Source: Prasinococcaceae sp. CCMP 1430
Taxonomy: Eukaryota > Plantae > Prasinodermophyta
Assembly (NCBI GenBank): GCA_013416795.1
Contig: RQSC01001207.1
Location: 114,350-149,301, forward strand
DNA: 34,952 nucleotides
Direction: 5' to 3'
Shown: positions 7,200-18,528 of the stretch, piece by piece
Position numbering within the stretch: position 1 is the first letter of the stretch
Layout: each line of letters begins with the position of its first letter
Notes under the pieces: generated by a model
Databases searched by the model: none
The model's input: the letters and a program-made list of their open reading frames with translations, nothing else
What the model was told of the DNA's origin: nothing
Position numbers and translations under genes: made by a program

Positions 7200-8824
7200 T
7201 CAGAGCTGCAGCAGGCGCCTGTAGACCTTCGCCACGAAGCACTCGGCGTCGTCGTCAAGGAACTCGCGCACGTCCGACAGCAGCACCGAGCCAGTGGTCC
7301 TCTTGCTGAGCTTGTCCATGACGAAGTCAGCGATCTCCGAGGCCACTTCCGCGTCCCCGCCCATGAGCGTCATGAGCTCGGCCTGCACCCACGAGCTCGT
7401 GCGCTCCACCGTCGTAGAGGCGGAGGCCTTGGCCCAGTCGACCGTATTTGACGCAGCGATCACCTCGGCGTCGGACATCTCCGACGGCGGCTTGCCCGTG
7501 CGCGACGAGGCCAAACGTGCGTTGAGGCGCTTGAGGAGCTCCGACGCGGCAGCGGCACCCTGCTTGGGCACAGTCACGGCGACCTGCTCCTCCTGGGAGT
7601 AGTCGATCGGCACGAGCGGTCGCATGCGCTTCGCACTCTCCTGCTCCTCTCTCTCCAAGGCCTCGGCGCGCGCAAACACAGCCATGGTGGCCAGCCGCTG
7701 CTGCTTCTCCTTTTCCGCCGCGGCGGCTGCAGCGGCGACGCGCTTCGCGGCGGCCTCCTTCACGCGTTCCTCCTCCTCCAGGCGGCGGGCCTCCTCTTCC
7801 ATCGCGGCGGCAGCAGCGGCCGCAGCAGCCGCTGCGACGGATTCTGCTTCCTTCTTGAGTGTCTCGACGCGTTGCGCCTCCTCTTCAACCTCGCGCCTCT
7901 CACGCCGCTCATCCTCGGCGTCCGCTTCGGCCTCGCGTGCGCGCGCGCGTCGTCGCCGCTCCTCCTCGCGCCCATGAGCGGCACCGCCACTGCCGTCCCA
8001 TGAACCCCCATACGGCGCCCGCGCGCCGCCCGCGCCCGCCCATCGTCAGCGCTCGCAGCACACGGCACACCAGGTCACACAACCACGGCGGGCTGCCACA
8101 GAGGGCACGCGATGCAGCGAAGTGAAGGACGGGGCGCGCTTTGAGATCTTGCAGGATATAATTCTCCGACGGTCATGTAGTCATCATGCCGGAGACTCAA
8201 CTCCTGCTGCTTTCGCTGCGCTGTGCAAGGACCAGGGCTCGCAGCAACGCACCTTCGCAACTTCGCCGCAAGCGCCCGCAGCATCGCAGCGTCGTCCGCG
8301 CTCTCGCTCTCGTCTTTTTGCATCTTGGTGCGCCGCTCTGCGAGTTGCCTCGCGTCGTACTCAAGGTCACTGCGGTGGGGGCGTGTGATGCGAGGGCGCA
8401 AGCGCAGGTGCACGTGCACACAATGACTGTCAGTGGGTGCGCCGTGCCTTGCGGGGAGAGAGGTCCGCAGCCTACATGCGCGCCCATGCCCTTTGCTCGC
8501 GCGGCCACGTGACGCACCGTTCGCGCTTCTCTGCTAGCGATCGCTCCCTGTCCTCCCATCTCCGCAAGCGGTCCGCGTAGCCGCGGCTGTCGCGCTCGCG
8601 CCGACGACGATCGGCGCCGTGACTCAGCTCAGCCTCCAAACGCGACTCAGCAGCGCCCGCCACCTCGCCAGCTGCGGCCCGCGTGCGTTCGGGAGCGGGC
8701 GTTGCAGCCGAGGCAGGATTCGCCGCTGGCGCGCCCGCGGGTGCGCTTGTCCCTGCTGGTACTGCGGAGGTGGGCTGCGGAGGCCTTCCCGGGGGCGGGC
8801 CAGGAGGCACGACGGCTGCTGGCG

Positions 8825-8858
<34 letters not shown>

Positions 8859-9466
8859 CGCTACGGTGGCGGGTGGGGCGCTCCCCGTGCCGCCCATGAG
8901 CTCCTGCTCGAGACGCTGCGCATCAGAGCGCGCCGTCGCCGCCGCTGCGGTCGCCACGACTTTGGCGGTCGCGCTCACGATGGCCGTCACCTGTGCCTTG
9001 AGGTCGGCGATGTTCTGCGGAAGCCCGGTGGGCGCGAGGGCTCCAGGCGACTCGTCCGGCTCCAACCCATCCGCCGCCCTCCGAGCCGCGGCGTGCTCGA
9101 GGTACGCCTGAGTGGCCTTGTTTGGCTTCACGAGCAGCGCACGCCCGTCGACCTCGAGCCCGTTGAGGGCGGCCACGCACCGCGTGCACGCCTGCGGCGT
9201 GACGAACTCAACGAAGCCGAAGCCCTTGGGCTTGCCGGTCGCTGGGTCGCGCGTGGGTTTCCACGAGCGCACGCCGCCGCAGAGCGCGAGCAGGCGCGTC
9301 ACGAGCGCATCGGCGACGGTCGGCGCAATCTTGCCAACGTAGAGCGTCGTGCTTGGCGGGGGGCCGGCCGCCACGGTCGTGGCGGCCGCGCCTGCGCTCG
9401 CGGGGGGGGCGCCCCGTCCGCGCCGTCCGCGCCCAAGTCCCCGCCGCCGTCGTTCCCCAGTAGCAT
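7200..9466 (-). CDS. RBM25: RBM25/Snu71-like splicing factor (RRM, charged region, PWI); complement(join(7200..7989,8253..8369,8518..>9391)); 5' end unresolved
   Basis: RRM TLYVGKI...KPKGFGFVEF...LNGLEVDGRALLVK, an R/E-rich middle, the RPLVPIDY motif, and a C-terminal PWI-like DW...WVQAELMTLMG...FVMDKL...FLDDDAECFVAKVYRRL. Two phase-2 GT-AG introns keep frame. No in-frame ATG follows the TGA at 9518-9516. Confidence 0.88.
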
Positions 9467-10144
9467 GGCGTCCGCGAACGCGTTGGCAGCGCCCGTCCCG
9501 TGGCTGCTGCCGTTCTCACGCCCTGCACTGCCGCGCGCCACCTCTTCGGAGGCGTTGCCCCCGCTCGCCGCGCCGCTGCCCCCACTGCTCGTGCCCCTGA
9601 GCGCCTCCTGCTCCTGCGCGTCGTTGTCGAACCCACCCGCGGTGCGCGCAACCAGGTACAGCTGCACGTTCCGCGCGCGCTGCATGCTCAGCGCCCTCGC
9701 GATTTCTTCCGGGCAGTCCGGCTGCACGTGGCCGGTGACACGCAGCCGCAGCGTCGGGTGCCTGCGCAGCAGCGCGGCGGCCGAGTCGAGCGCCGGCTGC
9801 GCGCACAGCGCGAGGTCGCCGCTGCCGAACTGGAAGTGCACGTCCCCGAAGCGGGGCGGATTCTCCGCCAGGTGGAGCCTCTCCAGCGTCCACTCGGCGT
9901 CCGCCTCAACCTGCAGCGGCAGATCGCCCGCGCAGTGCGCCGCGTGGATGGCCGCCCAGTCCCGGCTGGCCGCCACGTGCCTGACGACCGCAGAGCCGCT
10001 CAGCGCTACGCGCGAGGCACGGCACACGCACGCGAGCCGCGCGAGGTCCGCCGCGCTGAGGTGCGAGAACAGCGCTACCAAGCACGCCCCGTCCAGCACG
10101 TCGAATGGATATGCGGTCGACGTGCTCGCCCCGCCGGCGGACAT
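9299..10144 (-). CDS. F-box protein with OmpA/MotB C-terminal-like domain
   Basis: ATG at 10144. F-box-like FDVLDGACLVALFSHLSAADLARLACVCRASR (about 10105-10000). OmpA_C-like VHFQFGSGDL...ALDSAAALLRRHPTLRLRVTGH...LSMQRARNVQLYL (about 9841-9644). 3' end uncertain because it overlaps RBM25. Confidence 0.72.
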   Translation of the reverse strand: MSAGGASTSTAYPFDVLDGACLVALFSHLSAADLARLACVCRASRVALSGSAVVRHVAASRDWAAIHAAHCAGDLPLQVEADAEWTLERLHLAENPPRFGDVHFQFGSGDLALCAQPALDSAAALLRRHPTLRLRVTGHVQPDCPEEIARALSMQRARNVQLYLVARTAGGFDNDAQEQEALRGTSSGGSGAASGGNASEEVARGSAGRENGSSHGTGAANAFADAMLLGNDGGGDLGADGADGAPPPRAQARPPRPWRPAPRQARRSTLARLRRPSPMRS

Positions 10145-10329
10145 GGCGCCGCCGCCCCCCGCCCCACTCACCGACCCCGTGCCCGACCCAATCACGCCCG
10201 CTCACGACAACACCCACTCCGCCCGCCCGCGCCTCGCTCGCCGCCCTTGCTTCGCCCCCGACCGCGCGCCGGCGCCGCCGCCTCGCGTGCNNNNNNNNNN
10301 NNNNNNNNNNNNNNNNNNNNNNNNNNNNN

Positions 10330-10755
10330 GCGCCGGCGGCGCGCCGCGCCGCCACGCGCCGCGTCGCGGCGTCGGCCTTCGTCCAGCCGGAGATCTACGT
10401 CAAGGCGTTCTGCGCCGTCATGGCGATCTACTCCGCGCAGATGATCCTCATCCCCGCCAAGATGGTCTCCGACCACTTCGACGCGACGGCCGACGCCATG
10501 ACCAAGTTCTGGATCCGCGGACAGTCCTGCGCCTGGCTCGGCGTCGTCTACTGCCTGACGCAGCTCCAGACGGCGGTGGCGGTCAAGGTCGCCACCGGCG
10601 TGTCGGTGGCCTGCGCGGTTCTCTACCCGTACAACGCCAAGTTCGGCGTGCTCACCGGCGACGGCTTCCCCGCGGTCAAGTACCCCATGCACTACGTGCC
10701 CGAGTTCCTCATGGGCGCGCTCTCGCTCGTGGGCCTGTACCTCTGCTTCGCGTGA
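10330..10755 (+). CDS. Small membrane protein (about 4 hydrophobic helices) of unknown function; start lies in the N gap
   Basis: Very strong C/G-ending codon bias. Hydrophobic segments YVKAFCAVMAIYSAQMILIP, WLGVVYCL, VATGVSVACAVLYP and EFLMGALSLVGLYLCF. An Arg/Ala-rich leader (RRAATRRVAASA) resembles the end of a transit peptide. Confidence 0.8.
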   Translation, partial: APAARRAATRRVAASAFVQPEIYVKAFCAVMAIYSAQMILIPAKMVSDHFDATADAMTKFWIRGQSCAWLGVVYCLTQLQTAVAVKVATGVSVACAVLYPYNAKFGVLTGDGFPAVKYPMHYVPEFLMGALSLVGLYLCFA

Positions 10756-11741
10756 GCACGATCGCGCGCCGACTACCAAGGGGCCGCCGGCGGCGACAGC
10801 CGCACGCGACCGTAGTGAACCGATCAAAGAGCGCCGCGCCATGCATGCAGTAACGCGGGGCCCCTCCGACTCCTGAAGACACCGACACCCGCGCCGCAGC
10901 GCACGCAGTGCGCACTGCTGCGCGCGATCGGCCACGCGGCGGCGGCGCCAGCGCTCGCACGCACACGCGCGCGAGCAGAAGGACGGCGCAGCGAGCCACG
11001 CGCGCGACCATAGAACAGATCGAGCGGCGATCGGCAACGCGTCACGCGTGGAGCAACGCGGCGCCACCGACCGACTCCTCGCACGCGTACTCGTGCGCGC
11101 GCGGTGCGACTGCGCTCCGCGCGCGATCGCGCGTGCCCCCAAAGTGCGACGCCCACCGCGGCGCGCGCTGCTCCGCGAAGGTCCAGTGTTAGATCGCCAC
11201 GCACCCCGAGCGGCCCTTGCCGAGGGGCGGCGCCTGCACGAAGCGCACGTAGAAGCGCCCTCTCCCCCCCCCCATACACACACGCACACACACACACGAA
11301 CTTACACACGCACACAACACGCGCGCCCACCCTCGCGACAGGCGCAACTCGGAGGCTACCGTGCGGAGCAGCTCCTGCGTTCCACCCGTGCTCTCGATGA
11401 GCTCCTGCCGCGCGCCCCGCGCCCCCACGCAGCGAGGGGCGCCTCGACGCCGCCCCGATCGGCCTTTCCAGCCCCCCCGCGGGCCCGCACACACACCACA
11501 CGCGCGCTCCCTCCCCGCCGGCGCCTGGGGGGGAGGCGCTGCGCGCAGGAGGAGCGCACGATGGCCACGTGCCCAAACCACTAACAAAAAACGAATCTGC
11601 GGTATCTCGCACGAATTACAACCAATTCCGCGAATTAGGCACTTACGGATGCATCATTCCCTTTAAGATGGCGCAGGCGAGCGAGTGAACCGATCGGCGA
11701 AATCGAATGCGCAACATACGATATTTCGCACACAAGAAATC

Positions 11742-11778: not shown

Positions 11779-12662
11779 ATGGATGGGATTCGAACCGCGG
11801 CTGGCGGCGGGCGCCACACTCTACCAACTGAGTTATACCCCCGCCTTCTCTGTCAAAGAGAAAGGGTGCCATGCCCGACGTTCGCGCCGCACGTCACGTT
11901 GCTCGGTGAGGCCTGGCGCCCCGCCGCGGCGCCGCGCGCGAGCGGGCGGGCTGCGGCGCTCGCTGACGCCCTCCCACGCCTTGCGACCCTCGTCCGCGCG
12001 CCGTCCTCGCTCGCACGCCCCCTCCCTGTTGCGCGTCTGCAGGCGGCTTTCCGTCCGAGTCCGATGATGCCGCTCTCAGCGCGACGCGCACGCTGTGCCA
12101 GGGGCTCGGCTCGGCCGATGGCCCCGCCTTCTGGGGGCTCGAGGTGCGAATGCCGAGCCCACGCGTATCGACGCGTGCACATGCGCGCGCGCGCTGCTTG
12201 AGCGCGTGCGCTCGCCGCGCGCGCGCGCGCTCACGCACCCACTCGCGCGTGCGCTCGCAGATTGAGCTGGACGCCCCAGAGGCGGGTGCGACGCACTTCC
12301 AGTGCGTGTACATGCGCGTGAAGACGCCCAACTCGGCGCTGGCTAAGGCAAACGCACTCGCGCAGAAGGCACTCATGCATGTGACTGGCGATGAGGGCGA
12401 CGGTGGGGGCGCGCTGGAGCTCGCCCCGTACCTGCCACACCTGAGCCTGGTGTACGGCGGCACGCTGGAGCAGGCCGAGCGCGCGGCGATCGTCGATGAG
12501 CTGCGCGGCGGTGCCACCGACGCCACGCCCACTGTACGCGCGCCTACGGAAGGCTTCGTCGCCAACGAAGTCTCGCTGTGGTACACCCCCGTGAAGGACC
12601 AGAGCACCGCCAGCTGGAGGGAGGTTGCGAAGGTTCGCATGGAGGGCGTCGACGGCGGGTAG
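11779..12662 (+). CDS. Cyclic phosphodiesterase (2H phosphoesterase, plant CPDase-like); join(11779..11905,12043..12143,12261..12662)
   Basis: Two 2H motifs, PTFAPHVTLLG and PYLPHLSLVYG, plus FQCVY and a C-terminal D.S..SWREVA as in Arabidopsis CPDase. Introns 11906-12042 (phase 1) and 12144-12260 (phase 0) keep frame. Start codon uncertain. Confidence 0.85.
11780..11842 (-). pseudogene. tRNA-derived relic (D-arm/A-box and T-loop/B-box intact; anticodon arm and acceptor stem degenerate)
   Basis: Minus strand reads GGGGGTA TA ACTC AGTTGGTA GAGT G TGGCG CCCGC CGCCA GCC GCGG TTCGAAT CCCAT CCA. It is only about 63 nt, has a 5-nt anticodon loop and lacks acceptor-stem pairing. Confidence 0.65.
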
Positions 12663-12837
12663 GGGATCGCAACGCACACGGCACGCGCGCGCTTGCGGGC
12701 GCTCCAACCCTCCGTCTCAGCAGGCAGGCAGCGCGCGACCGATAATACGAGCTGGCACGGCCACTTGGTACAATGCGGGCACAGGCCCCATTTAGAAATG
12801 ATACACACACGTATGGTAGTATGGTAGAGTGACGCAC

Positions 12838-15422
12838 TCATGCCTCCGCAGCGCCAGCGCCGTCGGCGGAGTACGCCGCGGTCGGAAGCAGCTTGTAGGC
12901 GGATATGCAGTCGAGCAGCCAGCTGCTGGTGAGGAGCTCAGCCTCAGCGCCGTAGCGCGCACGCGCCGCGCGCACCGAGGCCACCGTGAGCGGGGTGGGC
13001 ACGAGCACATGCAGGGGAGCACCCTCGAAGTCGGTGCCGCGCGCCTTGGCCTTCTCCTTGGCATTGAGAACACGCCCGCCGCACATGCGCGCGAGCTTCT
13101 CGGTGTCGGCCTGCGACGGAACGGCGTCCGCGTTGGCGCACACGACGAAACAGTGGCCATCGAGGATGGGCCTGCCCCCGGCGGCCGCGCGCTCGCGCGA
13201 GCGCAGCACGCCCCCGGACTGGTGCATGTCGCCGAGCACCACATGCGTGCGCGGGTCCGGCTCAAGCCACTTGCCGGCAGCGCGGCTGTCGCGAACCCAA
13301 TCGATGCCCACGACCCATTTGCCGGCCGCCTGCGCGCAAACAGACAAAGGCGTGCGCGCCGGGGCCATTTCGCGTTAGCACGTGCGCGCGCGCTCGCGAG
13401 AGAGAGAGAGAGAGAGAAGCGCGCGCCGCCAAGCGCACGTGCGCGCGAGCGCGCGTTCGGCGCGTGCCCGGAGGGACGCACCACCGCATTGAAGTACTTG
13501 AGGGTGCGCTTCGCCGCCATCAGCCGCGTCTCCTCCTTTTCAGGGTTAGGGGCGTCCGTCACGATGACGAGGTGCGTGGCGCTGGCGCCAGCGGCCTTCG
13601 CAGGTAAGACTTTTGCGTCCCCGAGCTCGTCGCATGCGGTCGCCAACAAGTCTTTGTCCTTCCTGGCCAGGTTAGACTGCTGCAGCACCACCTGGGCCTG
13701 CGTCTGCTTGCGCTGTCCACCCGATCGTCTCGACTTCGACTGCCCCTGCGTTGGCGTCCGTAGCTCGGCTGGCGCGCTCAGCCCGACTGGGCTCTTCGGG
13801 CGTGCCGGCGTCTTCGCTGCTGCGGATCGACGCGAAGCAACGCGAGAGGAGGATCCCTTGGCGCGCCTGCGGGTGCCACGTCGCTTGCTGTTGCTCGGGG
13901 GCGGGCTTGCCTGCGACGGCTGCACGCAGTCTGCATTCGCCCCTTCGTCGGCGACCGCCGGGGTGGCTGCGACAGGCGAGGCCGCGGTCTCCGGGACGGT
14001 GGTCGCTGCCAGCGCATCGGCATCGGGCGCACGGGTGGGGGCGACGCCAGCCCGCAATGGTGTCGCCTTTCGCCGCTTTGATGAACGCTCCGAGCTCCGG
14101 CCGCAGGCCGCTTGACTTGGTTGTGACGCGCTTGGGCTGTCGCGTTTCCGCTGTGAGGTGCGCTGCGATGATCGGCGCGTGCGCGGCACTGCTGTCGTCG
14201 GTGCCAGGTCATGCGCCTCGACAACTGGCAGCGTGGAAGGCTGTGGCGCACCTGCAGCCGGGATGGCGGGCTCAGACTCCAGCATCGTCTCGTCGGGATC
14301 GTCTACCGCCGCCGGGGGCGGCGATGGCTGCGCGGCCTCGCCCTTGGGAGGAGGTGCGAGTCGCTTGGTCTCAACGAGATTCTGCAGATCCTTGAAGCGC
14401 TGCCGCATCACAGTCACCTCCGCTTCAAGCTTGCGCACCTCCTGTGTCGTCGGGATGGGCTCACTCAGCGTTTCGGGCCCCTGCCCATCGTCGCGCGTGT
14501 CGTTCACTGCATCCGACACGCCATCGGCGGTGCACGCCTCGCCGCGCGCGCCCGGTGCGCGAGCGTGCATGCTCATCGCTGCGCGCTCGAGCGCCGTGAG
14601 CTCCGGCTCGGCGGGCGCCTCACTGCCGCTGTCAGCGACGGGCGAGCCGTTTTCGACTCCCGGGCTCGTGCTGTGAGGAAGCGGCGCGCGGGCGTCCTCC
14701 TGCGGCGCCAACGGGGTGGGCTCGACCACGTCGTCCGCCGTTGCCGCGCGCTCAGGAAGGCACGGATCCGGCTGCTCTTCTTTCGAAGGCGCTGCCTCAG
14801 GCTCGTCCTCTGGCGCCGACTCGCAAGGTCGCGCCGCCGCGTGCTCCTGCGATTCGCAGCCCCGCGCCGGCCCCAGCCCATTCTCTGCTGCCTTGGCGCA
14901 TTGCCCTTGTTGGTCTGCGTCATCCGCGCAGGGCCCTTGCGACTGCGGTTGCTGCTGCCCGTGGCCGCGCTGCTGTTCATGAACGAGCTCGCGCCCGCCT
15001 GCGAGCTGTTGCTGTTCCTGCGGGGGTGGCTCCTGTGGCTCGCGCTGCACTGCCAACCCGCCGCCCTCATGCATCATCTCCTGCAGCATTTCGAGGGCGC
15101 TGACTGCGCGATTTATCATCGGGCACGGTGCGAGATCGAGCACTGTGACGTTCGGCCCGCCGGGGCAGCGATCCGAGGGGCATGGCCGCGCCGTGTGCGC
15201 GCGAGCCCCCCCAACGCCCGCGCCCGCGTCGCGCTCCTCGGCGAGCGCCTCGCGGCCGCACGAGAGGCACATCGCGCAGCCGCACGGCAGCACGGCGGCG
15301 TCGCGCACGGTGCCGCCGCAAAGCGGGCAGAGCAGCGCGTCCGCCAGGCACGCCGCAACGGCGGCGTCGTTCGTCAGCGACGCCGCGCCCAGGCTGAGCC
15401 CCGCGCCCAGCGAGAGCGCCAT
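12838..15422 (-). CDS. BRCA1: BRCA1-like protein (RING, disordered middle, tandem BRCT); complement(join(12838..13329,13482..15422)), about 810 aa
   Basis: RING CPLC...PCGCAMCLSC...CPSDRC. BRCT1 THLV...KRTLKYFNAV|AAGKWVVGIDWV. BRCT2 ends SSWLLDCISAYKLLP. Intron is GTGCGT...CTAAC...CAG, phase 0. No ankyrin repeats seen, which argues against BARD1. Confidence 0.75.
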
Positions 15423-15540
15423 GCTCCCCTCAAGCCCCGCGGCCTTCAGCCCGGCCGCCTCGGCCGCCTCCCCAGCCCGCGGCCTGCCGAACACGCGACG
15501 CGGCGCCCGCCCTGTGGCGCCCGCCCGCGCGCGCGCGCGC

Positions 15541-15743
15541 GCGCGAAAGCGCCGCGTATTCGGAATTCGAAGCCGCGTTTTCCCGCACGAGAAAAGGAGG
15601 GATGTGTTCTGGGTTTCCCCCCCGAGTGTTGTGGATGAACCCGGGGAGAGAGCGTTTGTTGGGGCCGTCGATGTCTGATTTAAACCAGGTGTGCCCCCTC
15701 CCATTCCGGGATCATTCGAGTTTGGCTTCGGCTCCTTTCGCGC
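15541..15743. promoter_or_regulatory. Three E2F-consensus sites upstream of the BRCA1-like gene
   Basis: GCGCGAAA 15541-15548, TTTCCCGC 15579-15586 and TTTCGCGC 15736-15743 all match TTTSSCGC. Confidence 0.55.
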
Positions 15744-15942
15744 GCGCGCGTTAGCACCACAGCCCGCAGCCGCAGTGTGCGCACGCCGCCTCCCCACCGT
15801 TGAGGGGTGGGGGGTGGGGGATGGCAGCGGCGGCGGCGCCGAGGCGCACCCGGCATGTGCTGCTCGCGGGCGGCGCGCTGGTCCTCGCGGTGGCGGCGGC
15901 GGCGACGTCGCGGCCGCCGCCGCGCGAGCGGTTGGGGGCGCC

Positions 15943-18528
15943 ATGTCGGGCGTGCTGTCGGCGGCAACCTGCGCCCTCCGCCTCGCCGTCGCGGCCGCGC
16001 ATGCCGCCTCTCGGTGGCTGAGCGACACCGTGGTCTCCCTCGTTCTCTTGGTGGCATTCTTCTGTCAGGCTCCCCAACTGCTCGCCGCCGGCCTCTCGTG
16101 GTGCTTGACGAACGTCGTCCTGTTCCATCCGTTCTCGTTGGGCTGCGTCTCGTTGGCCTTCACCTTCAGCGCGTACACCGGTAGGCTGTACGTGCGGCTG
16201 GTGGCGGACGACGTCGGGTTCGGCAATCCGCCCGGCTTCCCGACGGGAAATTTTGTCACCGCGCGCAGGGTTGAAGCCGAGGCGAGCGTCTCTTTGGCCG
16301 CCTTCGTGGCGGCGCACTGGCGGCGCTTCGTCGCAGCGCCGGCGACCGCGGCGCGCCGCGCGCGGCAGGGCCTGTCCCCTGCCGATGACGCGCGCCTGCG
16401 TGCGGCGCGAGCAAAGACACGCGCCGCGCGCACGCAGTCGAGGTCAGCGGTGGAGGCGATGGCGAAGGCCCCGCTAACTGCAGGGCGCACATTGTTCGCG
16501 GGGGCGATCGCGCTGGCAAGTTCTGCGCATGCTGCGGCGTGGACTGTGACGATGGCGGTGAGGCGCGTCACGCGTGGCGCAGAGCGCGTTGGAGGGCGAA
16601 GCGCGATGGCGGCGGTTGCCGCAGTCGGCGGCGGTGGCCAGCCTGACGTGGACGGCGCCACGGCCGCAGCGCAGAGCCGAGCGCGCACGGAAGAACAAGC
16701 GTTTCTCGGATGCTTCCGCATCGAGCGTCTGCAGATACACGGCGTCGGCCTGTGCTTCGAGACCGGGCCTGGTGGCGAATTTAACGTCAACGGCGTGACG
16801 CGGAGCGTTGCGTGCGGTGACCTGCGGCGGCTGGGCGTCCTGGGTCACGATATGACGATGTGGCCGAACAAGGTCTGCGTGCACGTTCTGCGCGCGAGGG
16901 GACTGCTCGCTAATGACGTCGGCGGAACGTCAGACGTGAAACTCGTCATCCAGTGCCGGCACCACAAAGTCGTGACTGCCGTGCAGTACAAGACGCTGAG
17001 CCCGCTCTGGAATCAGTCGTTCGAGCTGTGCATGGCAGACCCGAGTGCAGTCGTGCATTTTGCGCTGTACGACGTCGGCATGGTGAGCAAAGACAAGCTG
17101 CTCGCCCAGTGGCACATTACCCTGAAGATGCTGCTCCTCAAACATGGAGGCAAGATGTCGGGGTGGCAGACGCTTCGGGACAGAAATGGCGTGCGCTACG
17201 CAGAGCCGACCTGCGGGGAAATTGACATTCGTCTTGAGTACGTCTACGAGGAGGGCTTCGTGGCACGCTCGCCCAAGCCACCCTCGCTGAGTGCCATGGC
17301 TCAGATGGACATGAACAGCCAGGAGACTGCGTGGCGGATCGCAGACTTTCAAAACGCGAAGCTCTTCCTGGACGAGCGCTTTCCCTATCTCTTCGACATC
17401 CGCGCCCTGGAAATCGATGACGTACACTTTCGCATGAAGGAGCTGTTCGCCCGTGGCTCGGAGGCCGCGGCAGAGCTCGACGAGCGCCAGCGCGCCGCCA
17501 ATGATGCCGATGAGGCGCACGACGTCGATGAAGGAGGTTTTGTCCTGTATGATGAGGGTGACGTTGTGCTGACCTCCCTCGGAAGGAAGGACGTGCGTAA
17601 GGAGCGCAAGAGGCGGCGGCCTGGCGAGCGCTCCCCGTCGTCCCGCCCCCGAGCCATCGACCGAGCGGTGGTGCACGTACCCCGCCTGGAGCTCACACGT
17701 CGGAAGCACTTTCGTCCGCGCCCTGACAGGCCTGGCTGCTCGGTCTGGGAGCTTCTCGCTGGCCTCACCGGCATCATTCCGCAGGTCATTCAGCCAGACG
17801 TGCTTGGCAGGGCAACGCATGCCATGCTGGCGGGTGTGCTCAGCCGCCCGCTCAGCCTCAAGGGCGCCACCGTTGCTGTGGGAGACCAATTCCTCAACTC
17901 GGTGGAACGCGCCGCGGGCGCCGCCGCGCACGCCGGCACACACCTCCGCGCCAAACTGGGTGGGAAGGTCGGCACGGCGGTCGGTGAGAGCAGTGGCGAC
18001 GACGCACTACAGTCAGCTTCGCTCGGCCCGACGGCCGCTCTCGTGCGCAAGCCGCGCGGGCGCCATCGGTGGAAGCGCCGGCTGCTTGAGAGGCGCGGCG
18101 CGTCTGTATTTTATAAGGGCGTGCGCAGCGGGGGAGACGACACGCCGACGCCGTGGCTGCGCAAGTTTGAACTCGGCGCCGTGACCTCTGTGGCAGTGCT
18201 GGTGTCGAGTGGGACCAGCGTCATCCAACTCATCGACGACGGGGGCGGCGACGGGGTGGGCCCGTCCCCTGCTGGGACGGAGGCGACTGCCAGTGGAGTG
18301 CACCGCAGAAGCACCGACCGCGCGTCGCAGCATGCTACAGAGGTCAAAATCGTTGGGATCGACGACGATGACGAGCTCGCTCTCGAGGTCGACCGCTGGC
18401 GCGAGGCGTTCGTCGCCGCCGTCGAGGCGGAGCGCGCCGCGAAGAGGCGGCGGGCGGAGGCGGGAGGGCGGGGTGCCGATCCTCGCGGCGTGGTCACGCG
18501 CATGCGTAGCTGGCTGCGCCTTGAATGA
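15943..18528 (+). CDS. Membrane-anchored protein with AsmA-like beta segments, a C2 domain and a putative PH domain
   Basis: N-terminal hydrophobic segment (VVSLVLLVAFFC). AsmA-like VADDVGFGNPPGF and RIERLQIHGVGLCFE...GEFNV. C2: VCVHVLRARGLLANDVGGTSDV...KTLSPLWNQSF...FALYD. PH-like RHRWKRRLL...SVFY...VDRWREAF. Single exon; start may lie further upstream. Confidence 0.7.
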   Translation: MSGVLSAATCALRLAVAAAHAASRWLSDTVVSLVLLVAFFCQAPQLLAAGLSWCLTNVVLFHPFSLGCVSLAFTFSAYTGRLYVRLVADDVGFGNPPGFPTGNFVTARRVEAEASVSLAAFVAAHWRRFVAAPATAARRARQGLSPADDARLRAARAKTRAARTQSRSAVEAMAKAPLTAGRTLFAGAIALASSAHAAAWTVTMAVRRVTRGAERVGGRSAMAAVAAVGGGGQPDVDGATAAAQSRARTEEQAFLGCFRIERLQIHGVGLCFETGPGGEFNVNGVTRSVACGDLRRLGVLGHDMTMWPNKVCVHVLRARGLLANDVGGTSDVKLVIQCRHHKVVTAVQYKTLSPLWNQSFELCMADPSAVVHFALYDVGMVSKDKLLAQWHITLKMLLLKHGGKMSGWQTLRDRNGVRYAEPTCGEIDIRLEYVYEEGFVARSPKPPSLSAMAQMDMNSQETAWRIADFQNAKLFLDERFPYLFDIRALEIDDVHFRMKELFARGSEAAAELDERQRAANDADEAHDVDEGGFVLYDEGDVVLTSLGRKDVRKERKRRRPGERSPSSRPRAIDRAVVHVPRLELTRRKHFRPRPDRPGCSVWELLAGLTGIIPQVIQPDVLGRATHAMLAGVLSRPLSLKGATVAVGDQFLNSVERAAGAAAHAGTHLRAKLGGKVGTAVGESSGDDALQSASLGPTAALVRKPRGRHRWKRRLLERRGASVFYKGVRSGGDDTPTPWLRKFELGAVTSVAVLVSSGTSVIQLIDDGGGDGVGPSPAGTEATASGVHRRSTDRASQHATEVKIVGIDDDDELALEVDRWREAFVAAVEAERAAKRRRAEAGGRGADPRGVVTRMRSWLRLE

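What the first reader, a model, noticed from the sequence alone, without database searches (positions are those of the whole stretch)
9644..10144. F-box joined to a bacterial OmpA/MotB-like domain in an algal nuclear gene
Seen: an F-box-like N-terminus followed by VHFQFGSGDL-x5-ALDSAAALLRRHPTLRLRVTGHVQ...LSMQRARNVQLYL. Known: this matches the OmpA_C-like pattern (F..GS..L......LD..A..L...P...I.I.GHTD...LS..RA..V..YL) of the peptidoglycan-binding domains of Pal, MotB and OmpA. F-boxes recruit substrates to SCF ubiquitin ligases. The Arg of LSxxRA is kept but the Asp of GHTD is Gln, and the second half of the domain is missing or replaced by Gly/Ser-rich sequence. Inference: an SCF adaptor that senses a murein-like ligand (bacterial or plastid peptidoglycan), or a repurposed interaction module. 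This could be an undescribed algal sensing-to-degradation system.
Basis: partly seen in the sequence, partly recalled or inferred. Interest (0 to 1): 0.8.

Follow-up and report, generated by a model that had tools for sequence, protein, structure and literature searches.

The report
Algal F-box-like protein with OmpA-like domain
A small green-alga gene really does join an F-box-like module (normally a ubiquitin-ligase adaptor) to a complete bacterial-type OmpA/Pal fold. It belongs to an undescribed family found in several marine algae and alveolates, but its binding pocket has lost a residue that bacterial domains need to hold peptidoglycan.

Summary
The minus-strand ORF starting at 10144 carries an OmpA_C-like domain (Pfam PF00691, 31.7 bits against a cut-off of 27.2) behind a divergent F-box-like domain that scores just under the Pfam cut-offs but is supported by profile and fold.

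The "missing second half" is an assembly artefact. At 9408-9413 the window joins this gene to an unrelated RBM25-like gene. Contigs of two DNA and two RNA runs, and two further public contigs, all continue differently. They give a 322-aa single-exon protein (P0001) that ends in the canonical NRRV last strand.

With a 128-sequence alignment AlphaFold gives pLDDT 78. Residues 98-320 superpose on A. baumannii Pal at Z 17.2 and 1.4 Å, around an insert of about 110 residues that is largely disordered. Residues 13-61 superpose on F-boxes from Skp1 complexes.

At least 59 cluster representatives share the architecture. Named members come from Tetraselmis, Chromera and three dinoflagellates; the window's alga is probably Prasinoderma coloniale. 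Across the family the peptidoglycan-binding Asp is Gln or Arg, never Asp; the Arg is kept.

Best reading: a cytosolic SCF-type adaptor whose remodelled OmpA-like pocket recognises a ligand other than canonical murein. I found no paper on it. An earlier scan note on this same window had raised the mis-join.

The parts
9408..10144 (-). Genuine part of the gene: codons 1-246 of the 322-codon F-box-like/OmpA-like CDS. The remaining 76 codons and the stop are not in the window; they are at L001:907-1138.
   Evidence: blastn and tblastn of L001/L002/P0001 against the window: 99.3-99.6% identity from 10290 down to 9408/9407, then no match. Pairwise alignment across the break. An RNA-library contig of X15 is colinear over 9408-10107 and runs on for 283 nt.
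9962..10108 (-). F-box-like domain, residues 13-61. Helices at 19-26, 31-40, 42-49 and 51-60. Has L17-D18 instead of the usual Leu-Pro, and Ser instead of the usual Trp.
   Evidence: Pfam F-box-like 24.2 bits against a 24.3 cut-off. The family N-terminal profile finds only F-box proteins as its top 7 PDB rows, 4 distinct proteins: AnkB, FBXO22, FBXW7, GID2, E 0.02-0.3. VIA-align matches residues 13-61 to the F-boxes of Fbl10, FBH1, FBXL17 and FBXL5 in Skp1 complexes, rmsd 1.9-2.5 Å, 16-28% identity. Atlas feature hits are F-box clusters.
9848..9892 (-). Family signature linker W85-F99 (WTLERLHLAENPPRF), a helix packed just before strand 1 of the OmpA-like domain.
   Evidence: E88 and P97 are nearly invariant in A1, and E88 and L90 in A3. 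pLDDT is about 90.
9641..9847 (-). First part of the OmpA_C-like domain, residues 100-168 (strand 1, helix 1, strand 2, helix 2). Includes Q141 (9722-9724), which replaces the peptidoglycan-binding Asp, and the retained R156 (9677-9679).
   Evidence: Pfam OmpA 31.7 bits. Alignment to Pal 4g4v. Column counts. Model and fold matches.
9408..9640 (-). Window part of the Gly/Ser-rich, then acidic, insert inside the OmpA-like domain. The insert spans residues 169 to about 277 of the true protein, and pLDDT is below 50 over 190-235.
   Evidence: AlphaFold model. Foldseek and VIA alignments bridge this segment.
9408..9413 (.). Assembly mis-join, at 6 shared bases inside a G8/C8 run. No contig of four runs crosses it.
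   Evidence: read laying: contigs from the F-box side all leave the window before 9408 with the same 30 letters, which are the reverse complement of L001:907-936. Contigs from the RBM25 side end at 9413 with different letters. Depths are single-copy on both sides.
9299..9407 (-). Not part of this gene. This apparent C-terminal tail of the window ORF is an out-of-frame read-through into the 5' region of the neighbouring RBM25-like gene.
8472..9374 (-). Separate RBM25-like RNA-binding gene (RRM_1, 48 bits), wrongly abutted to the F-box gene. Its true 5' end lies beyond the mis-join.
   Evidence: Pfam. Contigs covering 8867-9413 end at 9413 with other sequence.

Best explanation
The window holds the first 246 codons of a single-exon, apparently transcribed nuclear gene of a GC-rich green alga, probably Prasinoderma coloniale. 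The complete product is 322 aa (P0001). It has an N-terminal F-box-like three-helix module, a family-specific linker helix (WTLERLHL..PPRF), and a complete OmpA_C/Pal-type alpha/beta domain interrupted by an insert of about 110 residues that is largely disordered. The apparent run-on into an RBM25-like gene is an assembly mis-join at 9408-9413. These points are shown. What follows is inferred. The protein acts in the cytosol as a substrate receptor of an SCF-type cullin-RING ubiquitin ligase. The F-box-like helices would dock on SKP1, and the OmpA-like domain would be the recognition module. Its pocket keeps the carboxylate-binding Arg. It has replaced the amine-binding Asp (by Gln or Arg) and the Asn (by Gly) with a motif of its own, G-[YHF]-A-Q-P-x-A-P-x-x-I-G-x-A-L-S-Q-A-R-A, conserved across the family. 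It therefore most likely binds a conserved ligand other than canonical diaminopimelate-type murein, such as an acidic or carboxylate-bearing group on a protein or metabolite. In about one fifth of family representatives an N-terminal hydrophobic anchor followed by a Lys/Arg cluster would tether the same module to a membrane with the domains facing the cytosol.
For: Gene and mis-join: P0001, L001 and L002 match the window only down to 9408. Contigs of two DNA runs that are identical to the window, and of two RNA-labelled runs, all continue as L001 does, and none bridges 9408-9413. The 90% cluster of P0001 has 9 members on many independent contigs. Fold: AlphaFold with 128 sequences gives pLDDT 78 and pTM 0.68. 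Foldseek finds Pal/OmpA/TagL/OprF at E 4e-05 with TM by target up to 0.88. VIA-align gives Pal 4g4v Z 17.2, 1.4 Å over 108 of 111 residues. F-box. Family: 207 hits at E<=1e-3. P0002 aligns over residues 17-321 at E 2.7e-37. 59 of the 128 aligned rows carry the linker motif. Taxa. A homologue has eukaryotic neighbours (bZIP, Notch, aspartic protease). Pocket: Q 27, R 12, D 0 at the Asp position; Arg in 45 of 47. D271 and R286 are critical for DAP binding in A. baumannii OmpA (PMC6572160). Membrane anchors: 11 genuine cases among 12 of 59 rows flagged. No signal peptide: only 12 residues precede the F-box-like domain.
Against: F-box Pfam scores are below the gathering cut-offs. The Leu-Pro and Trp that are typical of F-boxes are missing. 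Only 11 of 40 family N-termini hit PF00646 even at E<=1. The F-box structural Z-scores (4.4-5.5) lie in the range the tool calls common. No SKP1 interaction, substrate or ligand was tested. The RNA runs are labelled 'RNA?' and are contigs, so transcription is likely but not strictly proven. The organism name is inferred from a neighbouring gene's cluster-mate and from GC content.
Confidence: 0.55

Rival explanations
1. Peptidoglycan sensor. The OmpA-like domain still binds murein or muropeptides from the alga's own plastid wall when the envelope is damaged or turned over, or from bacteria, and the F-box couples this to ubiquitination.
For: The fold is nearly identical to Pal. The Arg of LSxxRA and the FxFxSxxL and NRRV motifs are kept. 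Prasinoderma coloniale is reported to encode all ten core peptidoglycan-synthesis enzymes (PMC7455551). Unchecked scan notes mention a nuclear PBP-A and plastid FtsW/FtsI in this genome. There is a conceptual precedent in glycan-recognising F-box proteins: an Fbs2/Skp1/glycan complex appears among the N-terminal fold matches.
Against: The Asp critical for DAP binding is never present in 59 family rows, and the Asn is mostly Gly. Named members come from dinoflagellates, Chromera and Tetraselmis. These lineages are not expected to keep plastid peptidoglycan: PMC7455551 reports complete loss in red algae and losses to different degrees in core Chlorophyta, and extending this to red-derived plastids is my inference. 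A cytosolic protein has no routine access to a wall between the envelope membranes.
Confidence: 0.15
2. Not a ubiquitin-ligase subunit. The N-terminal helices are only a structural cap or dimerisation element that resembles an F-box, and the protein is a stand-alone scaffold or ligand-binding protein, membrane-tethered in some species.
For: F-box scores are sub-threshold and the LP and W residues are lost. The N-terminal helices, linker and OmpA-like domain are all modelled at high confidence, consistent with a single compact unit although no PAE was available. The strongest conservation lies in the linker and pocket rather than in the F-box-like helices.
Against: Four independent approaches point to F-box and to nothing else: Pfam, the profile against PDB, structure and language-model features. 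Sequence identity to true F-boxes in the structural alignments is 16-28%.
Confidence: 0.25
3. A real F-box/OmpA-RBM25 fusion gene, or a truncated pseudogene, as the window text reads.
For: In the window the ORF runs on to 9299 and overlaps the RRM ORF (scan note s1-377834).
Against: No contig of four runs crosses 9408-9413. Both DNA runs that are base-identical to the window continue as L001 does, and depths give no sign of a second copy. The alternative continuation restores the last strands of the fold and aligns with homologues to residue 321.
Confidence: 0.04

Closest known systems
OmpA_C-like peptidoglycan-binding domains of Pal, OmpA, OprF, TagL and MotB (Pfam PF00691)
   Same: Same fold and topology: Pal 4g4v at Z 17.2, 1.4 Å, 28% identity. 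Pfam score is above the gathering cut-off. The FxFxSxxL start, the Arg of LSxxRA and the NRRV last strand are kept. The strand 2 to helix 2 loop has the same length, 20 residues.
   Different: Eukaryotic, with no signal peptide and preceded by an F-box-like domain. The DAP-binding Asp is Gln or Arg and the Asn is Gly across the family. There is an insert of about 110 residues, largely disordered, between helix 2 and strand 3. The loop motif QPxAP is conserved and family-specific.
F-box substrate receptors of SCF ligases (PF00646/PF12937), especially FBXO-class proteins with a ligand-binding C-terminal domain such as the glycan-binding Fbs1/Fbs2
   Same: A short N-terminal three-helix module followed by a separate recognition domain. 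Residues 13-61 superpose on F-boxes solved with Skp1. The idea of an F-box protein reading a non-protein ligand has precedent.
   Different: Scores are below the Pfam cut-offs and the Leu-Pro and Trp are missing. The recognition domain is a bacterial-type OmpA fold, which no paper in the searched library reports for an F-box protein. SKP1 binding is untested.
Chromera velia A0A0G4HIP6 (P0027) and Tetraselmis striata, Prorocentrum, Yihiella and Cladocopium homologues, named only 'OmpA-like domain-containing', 'unnamed' or 'hypothetical'
   Same: Same architecture, linker motif and remodelled pocket. These are members of the same family.
   Different: 25-40% identity. Insert lengths vary. Some carry an N-terminal membrane anchor that the window's protein lacks.

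Membership tests
OmpA_C-like domain (PF00691) | Pfam score at or above the gathering cut-off of 27.2 bits | tested here: met
   31.7 bits for the window ORF and 32.5 bits for P0001. 37 of 45 family members also match.
OmpA_C-like domain (PF00691) | Complete beta-alpha-beta-alpha-beta-beta fold | tested here: met
   The model of P0001 matches Pal 4g4v at Z 17.2, 1.4 Å over 108 of 111 residues. TM by target reaches 0.88. This is met only by the true 322-aa protein, not by the window ORF.
OmpA_C-like domain (PF00691) | Asp/Arg pair that binds diaminopimelate (D271 and R286 in A. baumannii OmpA) | tested here: not met
   Arg is present (R156), but the Asp position is Q141. In the family it is Q 27, R 12 and D 0. 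The residues' role is taken from PMC6572160.
OmpA_C-like domain (PF00691) | Actual peptidoglycan binding | not testable with these tools
   Needs a sacculus pull-down or ITC.
F-box (PF00646 / PF12937) | Pfam score at or above the gathering cut-off | tested here: not met
   PF12937 scores 22.4 to 24.2 against 24.3. PF00646 scores 17.1 to 19.6 against 20.5. These are near misses.
F-box (PF00646 / PF12937) | Three-helix F-box fold | tested here: inconclusive
   Residues 13-61 align to the F-boxes of Fbl10, FBH1, FBXL17 and FBXL5 at rmsd 1.9-2.5 Å over 40-44 residues, but Z is only 4.4-5.5. The family profile's top 7 PDB rows are all F-box proteins, at marginal E-values.
F-box (PF00646 / PF12937) | Leu-Pro at the start and Trp in helix 3 (typical F-box residues; from general knowledge of the family) | tested here: not met
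   L17-D18 and S44 at the corresponding positions by ungapped comparison with the Pfam match. The family consensus has no Pro there.
F-box (PF00646 / PF12937) | Binding to SKP1 | not testable with these tools
   No complex prediction or experiment was available.

The most novel reading that the evidence does not exclude
The family is a cytosolic surveillance receptor. Through a remodelled OmpA pocket it recognises a wall-derived or organelle-derived ligand: plastid or bacterial peptidoglycan fragments, or another D-amino-acid or carboxylate-bearing envelope component exposed on damage or infection. It then triggers SCF-dependent ubiquitination. This would be an algal counterpart of glycan-sensing F-box proteins and a previously unknown eukaryotic use of the bacterial OmpA fold.
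Probability: 0.12. Interest if true: 0.85.

Novelty: new variant of a known kind. Interest (0 to 1): 0.55.

Why it matters
F-box proteins are grouped by the domain that selects their targets, and an OmpA/Pal fold in that position has not been described in the searched literature. The family is conserved from a deep-branching green alga to dinoflagellates and chromerids, and it has its own invariant pocket motif. It therefore probably reads a specific, still unknown ligand, which could open a new ubiquitin-dependent pathway in ecologically important marine protists. The work also flags a concrete error in a published chromosome-scale assembly: a chimeric join that truncates one gene and removes the 5' end of another.

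Tried and rejected
- **Single-sequence AlphaFold of P0001:** pLDDT 46, unusable. Replaced by the alignment-based model.
- **Word-indexed homologue search on residues 1-175:** found only the protein itself. The exhaustive HMMER search was needed.
- **Weak tblastn hit at 15697-15801 as a possible second OmpA-like gene:** it lies upstream of a C2-domain membrane protein and has no OmpA signal, so it is chance.
- **High-ranking long hits (P0008, P0026, P0032 and others) as a possible bacterial source subfamily:** they are ordinary bacterial multi-OmpA proteins with canonical GHTD motifs and bacterial neighbours. Their scores add up over repeats.
- **ESM Atlas search on the whole protein and by shape:** only bacterial OmpA clusters, and no cluster with the joint architecture.
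- **Four literature searches for F-box with OmpA or a peptidoglycan-binding domain, or OmpA-like domains in eukaryotes:** nothing relevant.
- **Fusion with RBM25:** rejected.

Full report
**1. What is in the window**

Pfam OmpA (PF00691) matches residues 104-166 at 31.7 bits, above the 27.2-bit gathering score, but covers only profile positions 2-66 of 98. NCBIfam models for YiaD, PA1041, PdsO and Pal, and PDB Pal chains (best 4g4v, E 0.0034), hit the same stretch.

The F-box models score just below their cut-offs. F-box-like scores 22.4 bits on the ORF and 24.2 on the N-terminus alone, against 24.3. F-box scores 17.1 and 19.6, against 20.5.

**2. The "missing second half" is an assembly mis-join**

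The only close database relative, P0001 (322 aa), is identical to the window protein apart from one residue up to residue 246. It then continues with 76 different residues and ends in ...APNRRVSFTLLSL, the canonical last strand of OmpA-like domains. Its contigs L001 (5,033 nt) and L002 match the window at 99.3-99.5% from 10290 down to 9408 and nowhere else. L001 continues into MoeA/gephyrin-like and PHAF1 genes that the window lacks.

I laid Logan contigs of two DNA runs and two RNA-labelled runs on 8400-10290.
- Every run has a contig on 9408-10290, or part of it, that leaves the window before 9408 with the same 30 letters. These are the reverse complement of L001:907-936.
- Contigs from the RBM25 side (8867-9413) end at 9413 with other letters.
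- Nothing bridges the 6 shared bases, which lie inside a G8 run.
- The two DNA runs have no differences from the window on either side, so they represent the same strain.
- Their depths (366, 242 and 356 in X1) give no sign of a second gene copy.

Contigs show presence, not absence. Even so, six independent data sets and a 9-member protein cluster on many contigs agree on the 322-aa form, and none supports the window's join. The published assembly was built from PacBio and Illumina data (PMC7455551), so a chimeric join is plausible.

The tail 9299-9407 of the window ORF is therefore an out-of-frame read-through into the 5' region of a separate RBM25-like RRM gene. The X15 RNA-library contig (983 nt) runs from codon 13 to past the stop codon without a gap, so one transcript-derived contig covers both domains. 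The caveat is that the run type is only guessed to be RNA.

**3. Structure**

A single-sequence model was useless (pLDDT 46). With a 128-sequence alignment (A2) AlphaFold gives mean pLDDT 78 and pTM 0.68, with blocks above 90 over residues 20-70 and 90-170 and 80 to above 90 over 260-322.

The elements are:
- helices at 19-26, 31-40, 42-49, 51-60 and 63-69;
- a linker helix at 87-94;
- strand 1 near 102, helix 113-128, strand 133-139 and helix 146-168;
- a segment of low or poor confidence from about 170 to 253 (pLDDT below 50 over 190-235);
- a long helix at 254-282, strand 283-289, helices at 300-312 and strand 314-321.

Foldseek against the PDB returns only OmpA_C-like domains (Pal, OmpA, TagL, OprF, PorE), with E from 4e-05 and TM by target up to 0.88. 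The alignments run from residue 102 to 321. VIA-align gives Pal 4g4v Z 17.2, rmsd 1.4 Å, 108 of 111 residues and 28% identity, and 31 chains reach Z>=8, all OmpA/MotB-type. The fold is complete, with an insert of about 110 residues (169-277) between helix 2 and strand 3.

Below the OmpA block, the N-terminal region 13-61 matches F-boxes solved with Skp1:
- Fbl10: 40 of 40 residues, 1.9 Å, 28% identity;
- FBH1: 1.9 Å, 27% identity;
- FBXL17: 2.3 Å, 23% identity;
- FBXL5, FBXO31, Fbs2 and beta-TrCP1 also appear.

These Z-scores (4.4-5.5) are in the range the tool calls common, so this is supportive rather than decisive.

**4. A conserved family**

The exhaustive HMMER search found 207 cluster representatives at E<=1e-3 and 37 at E<=1e-10. 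P0002 aligns over residues 17-321 at E 2.7e-37. Dozens of others align from about residue 25 to about 170, that is across the F-box-like part, the linker and the OmpA start.

Alignments A1 and A3 show a shared N-terminal helical pattern, a near-invariant linker (W-T-L-E-R-L-H-L-x-E-x-P-P-R-F-P) and an OmpA-like core. 59 of the 128 aligned rows carry the linker motif.

A profile of 40 family N-termini searched against PDB sequences gives F-box proteins as its top seven rows (four distinct proteins): Legionella AnkB at E 0.02, then FBXO22, FBXW7 and GID2, aligned in register. Scanning those 40 N-termini against Pfam at E<=1 gives F-box in 11 and F-box-like in 7, and no other family in more than one. 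Language-model features of residues 8-98 also point to F-box clusters.

Named members come from:
- Tetraselmis striata;
- Prorocentrum cordatum and Chromera velia (UniProt A0A0G4HIP6, 'OmpA-like domain-containing protein');
- Yihiella yeosuensis and Cladocopium sp..

Others come from MMETSP transcripts, GOS and marine metagenomes. One homologue lies on a 16-kb contig among bZIP, Notch-domain, aspartic-protease and EF-hand genes, which is a eukaryotic setting. The long, multi-hit proteins near the top of the list are ordinary bacterial multi-OmpA proteins.

A hydropathy scan flagged 12 of the 59 family rows. Eleven of these have an N-terminal hydrophobic stretch followed by a Lys/Arg cluster (the twelfth, P0040, falls within the F-box-like helices). 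By the positive-inside rule (my inference) this would anchor the protein with its domains facing the cytosol. The window's protein has only 12 residues before the F-box-like domain, and no anchor or signal peptide.

**5. The pocket**

The alignment to Pal places Q141 at the Asp of GHTD and R156 at the Arg of LSxxRA, 15 residues apart, like D271 and R286 of A. baumannii OmpA. Those two residues are reported as critical for diaminopimelate binding, on the basis of D271A and R286A proteins measured by ITC (PMC6572160).

| Position | 59 family rows | 69 other, mostly bacterial rows |
|---|---|---|
| Asp of GHTD | Gln 27, Arg 12, Asp 0 | Asp 40 |
| Asn of YN | Gly 33 | Asn 36 |
| Arg of LSxxRA | Arg 45 of 47 | Arg 69 |

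The loop between strand 2 and helix 2 keeps its length but carries a conserved motif of its own (Q-P-x-A-P ... I-G). A remodelled yet strongly conserved pocket argues for a conserved ligand that is not bound in the canonical murein mode.

**6. Organism and the peptidoglycan question**

The PHAF1 neighbour on L001 falls in a 90% cluster with EukProt Prasinoderma coloniale PRCOL_00000516. The window's GC content (62-74% per kb, mostly about 70%) fits the 69.8% reported for that genome (PMC7455551). That paper reports all ten core peptidoglycan-synthesis enzymes in P. coloniale, complete loss in red algae and losses to different degrees in core Chlorophyta. Unchecked scan notes also mention a PBP-A and plastid FtsW/FtsI in this genome.

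The family also occurs in Tetraselmis, dinoflagellates and Chromera, where a plastid wall is not expected (my inference from the paper and from the red-algal origin of those plastids). A cytosolic protein would reach an inter-envelope wall only after damage.

**7. Verdict**

Shown:
- the gene is real, apparently transcribed, single-exon and 322 codons long;
- it has a complete OmpA/Pal fold behind an F-box-like module;
- the architecture is conserved in a sizeable family of algal and alveolate proteins;
- the canonical Asp is lost across the family;
- the window is mis-joined at 9408-9413.

Inferred: it functions as an SCF substrate receptor that uses the OmpA-like pocket for a non-murein ligand (about 0.55). 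The rivals are a scaffold that is not part of a ligase (about 0.25), a murein sensor (about 0.15) and a true fusion or pseudogene (about 0.04).

Four literature searches found no description of an F-box/OmpA architecture. Databases carry only automatic names. I class it as a new variant of a known kind, an FBXO-type protein with an unprecedented recognition domain, of moderate to good interest.

Noticed in passing
window 9408-9413: Chimeric join in the assembly at a G8 run. It truncates the F-box/OmpA-like gene and cuts off the true 5' end of the RBM25-like gene. The real downstream neighbours of the F-box gene (MoeA/gephyrin-like, PHAF1) are on L001 and not in the window.
   Followed up: yes
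window 8472-9374 (-): RBM25-like gene: an RRM_1 domain (48 bits), a Gly-Arg repeat and an Arg/Glu-rich tail. Contigs break at 8821-8866, where the tool skipped a repeat.
   Followed up: partly
window 10292-10330 and 10330-10755 (+): A gap of about 39 Ns lies between the F-box gene's 5' flank and a divergently oriented ORF for a small hydrophobic protein of about 140 aa with no Pfam match. L001:1-23 supplies some of the bases missing in the gap.
   Followed up: partly
window 11270-11320: A (CA)n-rich microsatellite in the intergenic region.
   Followed up: no
window 15691-18528 (+): Long ORF with hydrophobic N-terminal segments and a C2 domain (57 bits). It overlaps, on the opposite strand, a 1078-aa ORF (12792-16028) with a weak RING-finger match (18 bits, below cut-off).
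   Followed up: partly
window 11779-11905: Another scan note calls this a tRNA relic. ARAGORN finds no tRNA gene anywhere in the window, which does not exclude a degraded relic.
   Followed up: partly
L001:1438-3199 (-): The MoeA/gephyrin-like gene appears split between two reading frames (a 138-aa MoeA_C ORF and a 556-aa ORF), which suggests an intron or frameshift in that contig.
   Followed up: no
P0187 (EukProt Prasinoderma coloniale PRCOL_00000516, 864 aa): The reference annotation's PHAF1 model is twice the length of the 428-aa form found in all other assemblies. It may be a merged gene model.
   Followed up: no
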